Source of the DNA: Wallemia ichthyophaga EXF-994
Lineage: Eukaryota > Fungi > Basidiomycota
DNA length: 32,000 nucleotides
Reading direction: 5' to 3'
NCBI RefSeq assembly: GCF_000400465.1
Contig: NW_008806280.1
Span: 180,001 to 212,000, forward strand
This document shows positions 27,531 through 31,814 of the stretch, piece by piece; the stretch's first letter is position 1; every line of letters starts with the position of its first letter. A program made the position numbers and the translations under genes. The notes beneath the pieces are model-generated. The model saw nothing but the letters and a program-made list of their open reading frames with translations, searched no databases and was not told the DNA's origin.

Positions 27531-28736
27531 ATGAGCAGCGACAGCGACAATAGCGCAAACGATTTTGTTGGGAAACGTAAATCACCACCAGTGGATTCTC
27601 AGGAAATCCAAAACTCAGCAAAACGCCCAAACGATTCTGTTGGGAAGCGTAAATCACCACCCGTGGATTCTCAGGAAATCCAAAACTCAGCAAAACGCCC
27701 AAGAGTAGAACCTATGGATACCATTAAGATGGAGAAGAACATGTTTGGTCTTGATCCGAGCGATGAATTCATTAAAGAGATTTCCGATTGGATTTGGTTA
27801 AAGACCAAGAATTGCAAGCATAAAGTTGAGGTTGGTGGGCTTAGAATCACGTAGATATAGCTGAGACGGCTTGATTAGGTGGAGGCCAAAGTTGGACGAT
27901 TTTTAGATCAAAGTGCGCAGAGAGCAGGATTGCCTGTCGCAGTAGAGACCATTCTCTCTAATACAGACGGTTTAAAGTTTGAGTCGAATATGACAGAGGT
28001 GTGTTTATCTCACATGCTATATTCCATTCAATTGCACTCCTCACACAGAATCAGGCTCAACATAAGCATTACAATGGAATTCTCAATAAACGCGCATCGC
28101 AACTAAATCAAAACTTGCGTAGTAAAATAGACTGTGTCCACAATAAAGAGATAGACTCATTTCATTCGTCCGGTCGTGGCTCAGGTAAGGTTCGTGTAAC
28201 TAGAGATCAGGGCAAGACGGATATCAAAGAAATGATTGAAAAGGTGCGCGTAGCAGATTTGGCTATTTACTCACCCAAGAGGCTCTTCGATTGGAGGTTA
28301 AGCATAAACATGGAAGTGCCGCGTATGTTTAACCTAATTAATCCTCTGAGGAAGCCATGACACCATGTTTAGATAACGACCTGCCGAAACAAGACCCTTA
28401 TTATCAACGGAAAAAAGATAGAATGAGCTACACACAGCAGGAGATGCAAGTCGACCTAACGCAAGTATTTGCGAGGCCCGGTGAAGTGAGTCGGAGTTGT
28501 TTGTACAATGCTCTCGCTGACGCTGATTACAGCCACCGACGCACGAGCTCGAGCTTGAGATACGTAGGCCTAAATTTCTCATGGAAGAAGGCAAAAAACG
28601 CGAGCGAGGATTACCAAACATGTGTAAGCTCTATCGCACGCGTTTGTAATGACGTAAACTAAGAAAAATCCAAGACGACGAGTTAATCAAAGTATTTGTG
28701 AGCAACATAAGGATGCTTGTTAGGAATGGGATTTGA
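27531..28736 (+). CDS. CET1: mRNA capping RNA 5'-triphosphatase (CYTH/triphosphate-tunnel fold), short Pct1-like form, ~319 aa
   Basis: Introns 27831-27878, 27999-28048, 28323-28372, 28486-28532, 28624-28674 (960 nt). Motif A EVEAKVG; RVTRD; KVRVADLAIYSP..DWRLSINMEVP; RKKDRMSY; VDLTQV; motif C HELELE; C-terminus YDELIKVFVSNIRMLVRN. Confidence 0.9.
27558..27701 (+). repeat. Tandem duplication of a 72-nt (24-codon) unit in the CET1 N-terminal region
   Basis: Copies 27558-27629 and 27630-27701 differ at 3 positions (TTT/TCT, AAA/AAG, CCA/CCC); peptide ND[F/S]VGKRKSPPVDSQEIQNSAKRP twice. Confidence 0.97.
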
Positions 28737-29060
28737 ATTTATCTTGATGTAGCAAATATATTTTCTAACTCACGTAAAAAATTCACATTATTAAGTTGAG
28801 AACGCGTCTCAAAACCATCTTCATCATTATCAATCAACGGCATTTATCCAAGATAAAATAAATGTGAGTGAATTGATATATTCACGCGTATAATTACTCA
28901 CAGTATCTTACCAGCTAATTTCATATCGCCACGATGTCCGGAATGACAGTACGTCGATTGACGCGTCCAGCGTTCTTGACTAACATATGCACAAGGTTTT
29001 TAAGCGCGACGGCCGTAAAGAAAGCGTAGCCTTTGATAAGTGGGTTTTTCTAACACGCGT
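28638..29060. promoter_or_regulatory. Cluster of five MluI cell-cycle boxes (ACGCGT) at the RNR1 5' end
   Basis: Exact ACGCGT at 28638, 28802, 28884, 28961, 29055. RNR large-subunit genes are established MBF/MCB targets in ascomycete yeasts; function in this organism is inferred. Confidence 0.75.
28864..28914 (+). other. Predicted 5'UTR intron of RNR1
   Basis: Strong donor GTGAGT at 28864, branch-like TACTCAC near 28895-28901, acceptor CAG ending 28914 (51 nt; alternative CAG ending 28903). Ends 19 nt before the ATG. Confidence 0.55.
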
Positions 29061-31814
29061 AACCGTCTCTAAACGTGATTTTCAGAATCACAGCGAGAAT
29101 CAATAAGCTTTGCTATGGACTTGATTCAAATCACGTAGACCCAATTGAGATTACAAAGAAGGTCGTACAAGGTGTTCACCAGGGCATCACCACCGTCGAG
29201 CTCGACAATTTAGCTGCCGAAACGGCTGCATACCTCACTGTAAAAGTAGGTTGGTCACTGTACAATCATATACCCACGAATCTCACATCCATCACTAGCA
29301 CCCTGATTACGCTGTACTCGCAGCTAGAATAGCCATTTCAAACTTACACAAGGAAACCAAGAAGGCTTTTTCGGCTGTTATCGAAGATCTCTACAAATAT
29401 GTAAATCCAAGAAATGGCAAGCCAGGTCCACTTATTAGCGACGAGACGTATGATATAATAATGAAAAACCGCGGCGTACTTGACTCTGCTATCCTCTACG
29501 ATCGCGATTTTAACTACAATTTGTGAGTTGGGTTTTGTGCATACTAGCATCCTAACATTCTCATAGCTTTGGTTTTAAGACTCTTGAAAGATCATACCTT
29601 CTTCGTATAAATGGCAAGGTCGCAGAGCGTCCACAGCACATGTTGATGCGTGTAGCAGTTGGAATCCACGGTGCAGACATCGAGCGCGTTATCGAAACTT
29701 ATAACCTTATGTCAATCAAGGCATTTACGCACGCCAGTCCAACCCTCTTCAATGCTGGTACACCACAGCCTCAAATGTCCTCGTGCTTCTTGGTTACTAT
29801 GCAAGACGACTCCATTGAAGGCATTTACGATACTCTCAAGTCTTGTGCCCTTATTTCAAAGACTGCAGGTGGTATCGGTTTAAACATACACTGCATTCGT
29901 GCAACCGGATCTTACATTTCTGGTACTAATGGTTCTTCAAATGGTATCGTACCAATGCTCAGAGCATTTGATGCAACAGCACGTTACGTTGATCAAGGTG
30001 GTAATAAGAGACCTGGTGCTTTTGCCATCTACCTTGAGCCATGGCACCCTGACGTCTTTGAGTTCTTGGATTTGCGTAAAAACCACGGTAAGGAAGAAGT
30101 CAGAGCCCGTGATTTATTCTATGCTTTATGGATACCAGACTTGTTCATGCAACGTGTTCAAGAGAACGGTGACTGGCCTTTGTTCTGCCCACACGAAGCA
30201 CCTGGCTTACATGAGGTTTGGGGTAAAGAATTTGAGCAACTCTTCTTCAAGTACGAGAGAGAAGGTAGATCAAAGAAGGTGGTCAAAGCACAAAAGCTTT
30301 GGTACTCTATTCTCGACTCACAAGTCGAGACTGGTGGTCCATTCATGTTATACAAAGATCACGCAAATGCCAAGTCTAACCAACAAAACCTTGGTACAAT
30401 CAAGAACTCAAACTTGTGCACAGAGATTATTGAATACTCTGCGCCTGACGAAGTTGCCGTGTGTAACCTCGCTTCGATCGCTTTACCATCATACATCAAA
30501 GATCGCAGGTTCGACTTTAAGGAATTGCATAAGGTTACAAAAGTACTTACTCGCAACCTCAACCGTATCATTGATGTGAATTACTATCCAGTAAAGGAGG
30601 CTCGTAACTCTAACATGCGCCATCGTCCAATTGGTTTGGGTGTTCAAGGTCTTGCGGATGCATTCCAACTGTTAAGATTTCCTTTCAGCTCAGAAGAAGC
30701 AAGGTTACTCAACAAGCAAATATTTGAAACCATCTACCACGCTGCCGTTGAATCATCCACAGAACTTGCTACCGAATTCGGTCCATATGAGACTTATCAA
30801 GGCAGTCCAGCTAGCAAGGGACAGTTGCAATATGATTTATGGAATGTTCAACCCACTAATTTATGGGACTGGAATGATTTGAAGCAGAAGGTGGCTCGTT
30901 GTGGTTTGAGAAATTCACTTTTAGTCGCACCAATGCCAACAGCTTCAACATCACAAATATTAGGATTCAATGAGTGCTTTGAACCTTATACATCAAATAT
31001 TTACACAAGAAGAGTTTTATCTGGAGAATTCCAGATAGTAAACCCATGGCTGTTGAAGGACTTGTGTGAGTTGGGATTATGGAATGATGGTATGAAGAAC
31101 AAGATTATTGCGCACGGTGGATCAATTCAGAATATCTCAGAAATTCCATATGAGATCAAGGAACTGTACAAGACGGTTTGGGAAATAAGTCAGAAGGTTG
31201 TCATAGATTTGGCTGCTGATAGAGGGGCGTTCATTGATCAAAGTCAGAGTTTGAATGTTCATTTGGCGTCACCAACCCATGCACAGCTAACATCTATGCA
31301 TTTCTATGCTCACAAGAGAGGATTGAAGACTGGTATGTACTACTTGCGCACACGTCCACAATCAGCAGCTATTCAATTCACTGTCGACAAGGAAGCATTA
31401 GATGAGGCGAAGAGTGCACAAAGTGGCAAGTCAACACCAACAAGTGCACCAACACCACCCAATATACTCAATGGAGTTGAAAGAATGAAGTTGGAGGATA
31501 AGAATAGTAGCACGCGCTCGAATGCAGCGAGAAATGTTTCAACGCCAGTAAGAGCAGCCACCATTTCAAGAGCAGTGAGTGGAATTGAGAATACGTCATC
31601 AATCAAGCGCACGCTGTCTTCTCACATTGACATTGAGAATGATGAGAACAACCAACCAAGAGGAGAAGAAATAGTGGCTGGTGAAGAAACGGAAGATGAA
31701 GATGAAATTGATTTTGAGACAGCCAAAGCGAGAATGGAAGCTAAGCAACTCGAGCAAGAGAAGCTTATTTGTAGCATTGAGAACAAGGAAGCGTGTGTGA
31801 TGTGTAGCGGATGA
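28934..31814 (+). CDS. RNR1: Ribonucleoside-diphosphate reductase large subunit (class Ia), ~896 aa
   Basis: Introns 28949-28995, 29040-29085, 29246-29298, 29523-29566 (2691 nt). ATP-cone start [20 protein letters not shown]; SSCFL; NLCTEI; VCNLAS; PTASTSQ; GMYYLR; C-terminal CVMCSG. Confidence 0.97.

What the first reader, a model, noticed from the sequence alone, without database searches (positions are those of the whole stretch)
28624..29085. RNR1 cell-cycle boxes sit mostly inside introns, including an intron of the neighbouring gene
Seen: five exact ACGCGT sites in 423 bp. 28638 is in the last CET1 intron (28624-28674), 28802 is intergenic, 28884 is in a predicted RNR1 5'UTR intron, 28961 is in RNR1 coding intron 1 and 29055 is in coding intron 2. 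By rough base-composition estimate about 0.1 site is expected in this span, and I noticed only two others elsewhere (9727, 21983). Established: ACGCGT is the MBF (Mbp1/Res-Cdc10) element and RNR large-subunit genes are classic G1/S targets. Inference: with only 197 bp between the CET1 stop and the RNR1 ATG, the enhancer has been distributed one box per ~50-nt intron across two genes, an intron-housed promoter architecture.
Basis: partly seen in the sequence, partly recalled or inferred. Interest (0 to 1): 0.8.

Follow-up and report, generated by a model that had tools for sequence, protein, structure and literature searches.

The report
Cell-cycle boxes inside RNR1's first introns
The ribonucleotide reductase gene of the salt-loving fungus Wallemia ichthyophaga has five copies of the G1/S cell-cycle box ACGCGT around its start, four of them in short introns; two intronic copies are conserved in a distant sister species, and other basidiomycete RNR1 genes show the same intronic enrichment.

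Summary
The window is Wallemia ichthyophaga. Five exact ACGCGT lie at 28638, 28802, 28884, 28961 and 29055; 0 of 3000 simulated sequences gave such a cluster. The window's other two copies are exonic.

The gene models hold: the last intron of CET1 (mRNA triphosphatase) at 28624-28674, RNR1 ATG at 28934, and introns 1 and 2. The 5'UTR intron (28864-28914) is a prediction without transcript evidence.

In W. mellicola (CET1 58 % identical) three boxes sit at the same offsets from the ATG (-129/-48/+27 against -132/-50/+27). Two of these are intronic. In six control introns no hexamer is conserved (0 of 208). The CET1-intron and intron-2 boxes are specific to W. ichthyophaga. A third Wallemia-like lineage keeps only the intergenic box and adds an exonic one.

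In seven other basidiomycete RNR1 genes, ACGCGT is about 17-fold enriched in 5' introns (6 seen, 0.36 expected), as much as upstream. It is absent from 3' introns, even where upstream spacers are long.

Best reading: an MBF-type G1/S element set on both sides of the transcription start, like fission-yeast cdc22. Genome compaction is not the cause. Binding and periodic expression are untested. New variant of a known kind, moderate interest.

The parts
27531..28736 (+). CET1-like mRNA triphosphatase gene: 6 exons, 319 aa, last exon 28675-28736
   Evidence: Spliced model. Hits named mRNA-capping enzyme subunit beta, Pfam PF02940.
28624..28674 (+). Last CET1 intron (51 nt), holding MCB 1 and a conserved ATGACGTAA
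   Evidence: The downstream exon is conserved in three lineages.
28638..28643 (.). ACGCGT box 1, at -296 from the RNR1 ATG; specific to W. ichthyophaga
   Evidence: Absent from the orthologous intron of W. mellicola and of the third lineage.
28649..28657 (+). ATGACGTAA, a CRE/ATF-like element conserved in this intron in all three Wallemia lineages
   Evidence: TGACGTAA is unique in each 14-15 kb orthologous locus.
28802..28807 (.). ACGCGT box 2 (ACGCGTCT), intergenic at -132; conserved in all three lineages
28820..28839 (+). Block TTCATCATTATCAATCAACG, near-identical in W. mellicola; candidate core promoter / start-site region (inferred)
28864..28914 (+). Predicted RNR1 5'UTR intron: 51 nt, GTGAGT...TTACTCAC...CAG
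   Evidence: A unit of the same length and signals exists in W. mellicola (5932-5982 of L001). TTACTCA is one of the few conserved intron hexamers. There is no transcript evidence.
28884..28889 (.). ACGCGT box 3, at -50; conserved in W. mellicola at -48
28934..31814 (+). RNR1 (ribonucleoside-diphosphate reductase large subunit) coding region: 5 exons, 896 aa
   Evidence: 91 % identical to W. mellicola RNR1, Pfam ATP-cone/RR_lgN/RR_lgC. N-terminus identical to EOR01426.1.
28949..28995 (+). RNR1 coding intron 1 (47 nt)
28961..28966 (.). ACGCGT box 4, at +27, 13 nt into intron 1; same offset in W. mellicola
29040..29085 (+). RNR1 coding intron 2 (46 nt), at the FDK|ITAR position shared across Basidiomycota
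29055..29060 (.). ACGCGT box 5, at +121. Absent in W. mellicola and the third lineage; the orthologous intron carries ACGCGT in Agaricus and Calocera

Best explanation
The five ACGCGT are MluI cell-cycle boxes (MCBs). These are double-stranded DNA sites for the fungal MBF/SBF-type G1/S factor, which pairs an APSES/KilA-N DNA-binding subunit with a Swi6/Cdc10-type partner. They would drive G1/S and replication-stress expression of the RNR large-subunit gene.

The boxes form two groups on either side of the transcription start. The upstream group is 28638 and 28802. The downstream group lies in transcribed DNA: 28884 if the 5'UTR intron is real, and certainly 28961 and 29055.

The factor reads DNA, so exon or intron status does not matter for binding. 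Downstream boxes end up in introns because the first exons are tiny (15 and 44 nt) and constrained by the protein. Only the KERV codons can encode the box, as seen in other lineages.

The arrangement is not a side effect of Wallemia's compact genome. It matches a pattern seen in RNR1 of other Basidiomycota, and it parallels fission-yeast cdc22, which has one MCB cluster upstream and one in the transcribed region.

Shown: the cluster, the gene models, the conservation and the cross-species enrichment. Inferred: the identity of the binding factor, the position of the transcription start, and the regulatory output.
For: Cluster statistics: 0 of 3000 simulations reach it. All other ACGCGT in about 59 kb of Wallemia-lineage DNA are two exonic copies.

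Orthology and synteny: CET1 followed by RNR1 in W. mellicola and in a third lineage.

Conservation:
- Offsets are -132/-50/+27 in W. ichthyophaga against -129/-48/+27 in W. mellicola.
- The proteins are deeply diverged: CET1 58 % overall and 66-72 % in the core.
- In ten aligned orthologous introns only 10 of 347 internal hexamers are conserved. They cover the two MCBs, one branch site and ATGACGTAAA.
- Six control introns have 0 of 208 conserved hexamers.

Seven other Basidiomycota RNR1 genes:
- upstream 500 bp: 10 observed, 0.69 expected
- introns in the first 500 bp: 6 observed, 0.36 expected (P = 2e-6)
- 3' introns: 0 observed, 0.51 expected
- 3' exons: 2 observed, 3.3 expected

Specificity: ACGCGT ranks first of 180 same-composition permutations both upstream and in 5' introns.

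Other fungi: two Pezizomycotina-like metagenomic RNR1 loci also carry an intronic ACGCGT.

Literature: ACGCGT is enriched in G1/S and DNA-replication promoters of the basidiomycete Cryptococcus neoformans (PMC5137879). All fungi, except perhaps Microsporidia, retain SBF (PMC4862756).
Against: - There is no expression, binding or start-site data for any Wallemia.
- The presence of an APSES/Swi6 pair in Wallemia was not checked here.
- Two of the five boxes are not conserved in either other lineage.
- The third lineage has no intronic box at all.
- The cross-species sample is small: seven genes, three of them Agaricomycetes that share intron positions. The counts are therefore not fully independent.
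- The 5'UTR intron is unverified.
Confidence: 0.75

Rival explanations
1. Compaction spill-over. With only 197 bp between the genes, the RNR1 enhancer was pushed into whatever non-coding DNA was available, including the neighbour's intron. The intronic position is then a Wallemia-specific consequence of a 9.6-Mb genome.
For: The intergenic distance is 197 bp. 42 % of the 462-bp span, and 57 % of its non-coding part, is intron, so four of five boxes in introns is unremarkable. The CET1-intron box exists only in W. ichthyophaga.
Against: Coprinopsis, Agaricus and Cystobasidium have about 660, 960 and at least 1500 bp free of called genes upstream of RNR1. They still carry ACGCGT in 5' introns, as well as upstream in Coprinopsis and Agaricus.
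Confidence: 0.12
2. Only the upstream box or boxes work. The intronic ACGCGT are neutral by-products with no regulatory role.
For: Two intronic boxes (28638, 29055) are not conserved. The third lineage manages without intronic boxes.
Against: Two intronic boxes are kept at the same offsets although the surrounding intron sequence is randomised. Intronic ACGCGT is 17-fold enriched in 5' introns but absent from 3' introns in other Basidiomycota. It ranks top among 180 composition-matched controls.
Confidence: 0.07
3. The 28864-28914 unit is not spliced and the transcription start lies downstream of it. Box 3 would then be an ordinary promoter element at -50, and only boxes 4 and 5 would be intronic.
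For: No transcript evidence could be obtained. 5'UTRs in compact fungal genomes are often short (general knowledge).
Against: The donor GTGAGT, the branch-like TTACTCA and a YAG acceptor are conserved at the same spacing in W. mellicola, in a unit of the same 51-nt length. A GTGGGT...TTAAC...CAG unit exists in the third lineage. This rival changes the anatomy, not the main explanation.
Confidence: 0.25
4. The motif acts in the pre-mRNA (ACGCGU), for example as a splicing or intron-retention signal, rather than in DNA.
For: The downstream copies are nearly all intronic. In Calocera the box abuts the 5' splice site.
Against: The same hexamer is equally enriched in untranscribed upstream DNA. It also occurs in exon 2 (KERV codons) in the third lineage, in Coprinopsis and in L016. 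It is a palindrome matching a well-known DNA element.
Confidence: 0.03

Closest known systems
Schizosaccharomyces pombe cdc22+ (RNR large subunit) with MCB clusters MCB1 and MCB2 (Maqbool et al. 2003, Mol Genet Genomics 269:765, PMID 12898217). The reference was seen. Its content is recalled from memory because the paper is not held.
   Same: It is the same gene family and the same hexamer. It has two groups of boxes, one upstream and one inside the transcribed region, and both bind the MBF/DSC1 complex. As I recall it, the transcribed-region cluster is the major activating one.
   Different: As I recall it, the downstream cluster in S. pombe lies in the untranslated leader, not in spliceosomal introns downstream of the start codon. 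The Wallemia boxes are single and about 80 bp apart rather than tightly clustered. Function here is untested.
Saccharomyces cerevisiae MBF (Mbp1-Swi6) targets with upstream MCBs, RNR1 among them (general knowledge)
   Same: The ACGCGT core, a DNA-synthesis gene, and several copies per gene.
   Different: In budding yeast the boxes are upstream of an intron-less gene.
Cryptococcus neoformans G1/S regulon (Mbs1/Mbs2), with ACGCGT enriched in promoters (PMC5137879)
   Same: It is a basidiomycete, with the same motif at DNA-replication genes.
   Different: That study searched promoters only and did not address intronic sites.
Intronic transcription-factor sites and 5'-proximal intron enhancers in general, for example the p53 site in intron 1 of mammalian p53R2/RRM2B (recalled from memory)
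   Same: A regulatory DNA element for an RNR gene housed in a 5' intron.
   Different: The factor, kingdom and intron scale (kilobases against about 50 nt) all differ.

Membership tests
MCB/MBF-controlled G1/S gene | Several ACGCGT cores close to the transcription or translation start | tested here: met
   Five sites between -296 and +121, far beyond chance.
MCB/MBF-controlled G1/S gene | The gene belongs to the DNA-synthesis class of known targets | tested here: met
   RNR large subunit: 91 % identical to W. mellicola RNR1, about 70 % to other fungi, Pfam ATP-cone/RR_lgN/RR_lgC.
MCB/MBF-controlled G1/S gene | The sites are conserved in orthologous regions above the neutral background | tested here: met
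   Three of five are at the same offsets in W. mellicola, and one of five in the third lineage, which adds new copies. Control introns have 0 of 208 conserved hexamers.
MCB/MBF-controlled G1/S gene | The organism encodes an APSES/KilA-N DNA-binding subunit and a Swi6/Cdc10 partner | not tested
   Only literature supports this: all fungi, except perhaps Microsporidia, retain SBF (PMC4862756). A Wallemia protein could not be pulled out with the capped searches.
MCB/MBF-controlled G1/S gene | Periodic G1/S (and hydroxyurea-sustained) transcription that depends on the boxes; factor occupancy | not testable with these tools
   This needs expression series, ChIP/EMSA and reporters.
cdc22-type bipartite MCB architecture (upstream plus transcribed region) | At least one group of boxes lies downstream of the transcription start | tested here: met
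   Boxes 4 and 5 lie in coding introns downstream of the ATG. The status of box 3 depends on the unverified 5'UTR intron.
cdc22-type bipartite MCB architecture (upstream plus transcribed region) | The two groups have distinct roles (downstream activating, upstream restraining) | not testable with these tools
   This needs deletion reporters.
Intron-dependent enhancer (intron needed for expression) | The regulatory effect requires the element to be inside a spliced intron | tested here: inconclusive
   The placement is intronic, but no more so than the local share of intron DNA predicts (p = 0.11-0.29). Exonic copies occur in other lineages. 5' introns are enriched and 3' introns are not, which fits proximity to the start rather than intron identity.

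The most novel reading that the evidence does not exclude
A bipartite MCB layout, with one group upstream and one group just downstream of the start inside the first short introns, is an ancestral and selectively maintained feature of the RNR large-subunit gene across Dikarya. The fission-yeast cdc22 MCB2 cluster would be its intron-less remnant. The small 5' introns of this gene would then be retained partly because they house these sites. In Wallemia the regulatory region would also reach into the neighbour's terminal intron, which carries a three-lineage-conserved ATGACGTAA element.
Probability: 0.3. Interest if true: 0.6.

Novelty: new variant of a known kind. Interest (0 to 1): 0.45.

Why it matters
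MBF/MCB control of RNR genes is textbook. Motif searches in fungi, however, normally look only upstream of the start codon. These data show that in intron-rich fungi a substantial share of the RNR1 boxes sits in the first introns. Those boxes are as enriched as the upstream ones and are conserved where the rest of the intron is scrambled.

If this holds more widely:
- Promoter-only scans under-count G1/S targets in Basidiomycota.
- The odd transcribed-region cluster of fission-yeast cdc22 gains an evolutionary context.
- 5'-biased short introns gain one concrete function.

The analysis also corrects two GenBank gene models.

Tried and rejected
- Transcript evidence for the 5'UTR intron and the start site was not obtainable.
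- The JGI metagenome scan for further Wallemia species gave only distant eukaryotic RNR1 (at most 77 % identity).
- The CET1 homologue search found only W. ichthyophaga and W. mellicola.
- Within-species polymorphism is too low to be informative.
- The phylogenetic position of the third lineage is unresolved, since the three lineages are about equidistant. It is therefore open whether the intronic boxes were gained or lost.
- The literature held no report of intronic MCBs and nothing on Wallemia MBF. The key cdc22 paper is not held.
- An idea that TGACGTAA is a general Wallemia intron motif was rejected: the window's other three copies are not in introns.
- Presence of an APSES factor in Wallemia was not tested, because a heterologous query would not bring Wallemia into the 120 listed hits.
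Full report
**Source and gene models**

The spliced RNR1 protein built from the window has 5 exons and 896 aa, with its ATG at 28934 and its stop codon ending at 31814. It is 91 % identical to Wallemia mellicola RNR1. Its first ~890 residues are identical to GenBank EOR01426.1 of Wallemia ichthyophaga EXF-994. 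The window is therefore W. ichthyophaga.

The upstream gene is an mRNA triphosphatase (CET1-like, Pfam PF02940). I modelled it as 27531-28736 with five introns, the last being exactly 28624-28674. The GenBank models of both Wallemia species read through this last intron to a stop (P0122, P0137). Even so, the 62-nt exon behind it encodes YDELIKVFVSNIRMLVRNGI, which is conserved with synonymous changes in two other lineages. The gap from the CET1 stop to the RNR1 ATG is 197 bp.

**The observation**

ACGCGT occurs seven times in the window. Five copies are at 28638, 28802, 28884, 28961 and 29055. The other two are exonic: 9727 and 21983, inside the 848-aa ORF.

Shuffles give 3.9 sites per 32 kb, or about 0.05 per 423 bp. 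None of 1500 first-order and 1500 third-order Markov simulations reached five in 423 bp.

Relative to the RNR1 ATG, the boxes lie as follows:

| Box | Window position | Offset from ATG | Compartment |
|---|---|---|---|
| 1 | 28638 | -296 | CET1 last intron |
| 2 | 28802 | -132 | intergenic |
| 3 | 28884 | -50 | predicted 5'UTR intron 28864-28914 |
| 4 | 28961 | +27 | RNR1 coding intron 1 |
| 5 | 29055 | +121 | RNR1 coding intron 2 |

The 5'UTR intron is the one unverified piece. It has a GTGAGT donor, a TTACTCAC branch-like motif and a CAG acceptor. W. mellicola has a unit of identical length (51 nt) and matching signals, and the third lineage has a GTGGGT...TTAAC...CAG unit. I could get no transcript evidence.

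**Sister lineages**

W. mellicola loci L001-L006 keep the order kinase, CET1, RNR1. A third Wallemia-like lineage recovered from metagenome assemblies (L007-L014) does the same.

The three lineages are deeply and about equally diverged. RNR1 is 90-94 % identical between them, the CET1 core 66-72 %, and whole CET1 58 %.

- W. mellicola has exactly three ACGCGT in 15 kb, all at RNR1, at -129, -48 and +27. These are the same three compartments and offsets as boxes 2, 3 and 4.
- The third lineage has two ACGCGT in 13.7 kb, again both at RNR1. One is the intergenic ACGCGTCT, next to ACGCGC and TCGCGA. The other is in exon 2, formed by the codons for KERV.
- Boxes 1 and 5 have no counterpart in either other lineage.

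**Conservation against the intron background**

I aligned ten orthologous intron pairs between W. ichthyophaga and W. mellicola. Of 347 internal hexamers only 10 are conserved without gaps:

- ACGCGT in the 5'UTR intron
- GACGCGT in intron 1 (two overlapping hexamers)
- TTACTCA, the branch site of the 5'UTR intron
- ATGACGTAAA in the CET1 last intron

The six introns without boxes (CET1 introns 1-4, RNR1 introns 3-4) have 0 of 208 conserved hexamers.

**Are introns preferred, and is compaction the cause?**

Within 28624-29085, 42 % of all bases and 57 % of non-coding bases are intronic. Four of five boxes in introns is therefore not significant (p = 0.11 and 0.29).

To test the compaction idea I fetched RNR1 loci of nine other Basidiomycota, chosen before seeing their sequences. 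Exact exon-intron maps could be built for seven of them. The pooled ACGCGT counts are below.

| Compartment | Observed | Expected | Note |
|---|---|---|---|
| Upstream 500 bp | 10 | 0.69 | |
| Introns in the first 500 bp after the ATG | 6 | 0.36 | 17-fold, P = 2e-6 |
| 5' exons | 1 | 0.33 | |
| 3' introns | 0 | 0.51 | |
| 3' exons | 2 | 3.3 | |

ACGCGT ranks first of all 180 permutations of the same six letters, both upstream and in 5' introns. The runner-up, TGACGC, is the flank of the extended box.

The intronic copies by species:

- Coprinopsis: +138, plus an exonic KERV copy at +160.
- Agaricus: +95 and +186.
- Cystobasidium: +102 and +152.
- Schizophyllum: +434.
- Calocera: +235, by eye, at the donor of the FDK|ITAR intron. 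This is the same intron position as Wallemia intron 2.

Several of these genes have 660-1500 bp free of called genes upstream. Two Pezizomycotina-like metagenomic RNR1 loci (L016, L018) also carry ACGCGT in an intron, together with upstream copies.

Caveats: the sample is small, and three of the species are Agaricomycetes with shared intron positions.

**Interpretation**

The simplest account is that these are MBF-type MCBs placed on both sides of the RNR1 start.

- ACGCGT is the enriched motif of G1/S and replication genes in the basidiomycete C. neoformans (PMC5137879).
- All fungi, except perhaps Microsporidia, keep SBF-family factors (PMC4862756).
- Fission-yeast cdc22, the orthologous gene, has one MCB cluster upstream and one in the transcribed region. 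This is Maqbool et al. 2003; the reference was seen and the content is from memory.

The factor binds DNA, so 'intron' matters only as unconstrained sequence close to the start. The enrichment in 5' introns but not 3' introns fits proximity to the start. The occasional exonic KERV copy shows that introns are not obligatory. Boxes 1 and 5 look like lineage-specific additions to a homotypic cluster that turns over, not chance: two extra perfect hexamers in 460 bp are unlikely at 0.05 expected.

**What is not shown**

I have no data on the transcription start, on splicing of the 5'UTR intron, on the presence of the factor in Wallemia, on binding, on periodic or hydroxyurea-responsive expression, or on the effect of mutating the boxes.

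**Verdict**

This is a known regulatory system at a known target, with a placement variant (conserved boxes in very short 5' introns) that I did not find described in the literature I could search. That placement seems general for basidiomycete RNR1. I rate the interest as moderate.

Noticed in passing
window 28649-28657; L001 5728-5736; L007 5091-5099: ATGACGTAA, a CRE/ATF-type (M26-like) site, is conserved in the last CET1 intron of all three Wallemia lineages. TGACGTAA occurs only once in each 14-15 kb orthologous locus. It may be a stress or ATF input to RNR1 or CET1, or a splicing element.
   Followed up: partly
window 27531-28736 and 28934-31814: The public gene models are wrong here. 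CET1 is terminated inside its last intron in both Wallemia species (P0122, P0137). W. ichthyophaga RNR1 is fused to the downstream mitochondrial-carrier gene (EOR01426.1, 1242 aa) or to still more neighbouring sequence (TIB59303.1, 1995 aa).
   Followed up: yes
window 27556-27702: A 72-bp tandem duplication (2.0 copies, 96 % identical) in the N-terminal coding region of CET1 repeats a 24-residue KRKSPPVDSQEIQNSAKRP-type segment. Strain variants differ here (P0122, P0135, P0136).
   Followed up: partly
window 28820-28839 and 28774-28786: The block TTCATCATTATCAATCAACG just after box 2 is near-identical in W. mellicola, and an A-rich GTAAAAAATTCAC lies about 30 bp before box 2. These are candidates for a start-site region and a TATA-like element.
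   Followed up: no
L007 5386-5446 (also L009, L012): In the third Wallemia-like lineage the predicted 5'UTR intron holds three copies of a 9-nt repeat (CATTACGTT), with copy-number and SNP variation between metagenome contigs. The nearby CGCG cluster is invariant.
   Followed up: partly
L007-L014 (ENA and Logan metagenome contigs): This is an apparently unannotated third Wallemia-like lineage. The locus is 32 % GC, a zf-RING gene is inserted after RNR1, and there is an extra intron in the large RNR1 exon. It is about as far from W. ichthyophaga as from W. mellicola.
   Followed up: partly
window 28934-28948; L001 6001-6015; L007 5473-5487: The first 15 nt of RNR1 (ATGTCCGGAATGACA) are identical in all three lineages. 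The second Met aligns with the start of other fungal RNR1 proteins (M-x-V-F-K-R-D-G), so the true start codon may be 28943.
   Followed up: no
window 15661, 17127, 25122, 28650: TGACGTAA occurs four times in the window against 0.75 expected from shuffles. The three copies outside the CET1 intron are not in introns.
   Followed up: partly
L099 1501-1740 (Coprinopsis), L103 1501-1730 (Agaricus): The annotated first intron of RNR1 (about 120 nt) probably hides a 4-nt micro-exon (ATGG, restoring ...KRDGRKE...). The annotated proteins read KRGTRKE or KRGIRKE instead.
   Followed up: no
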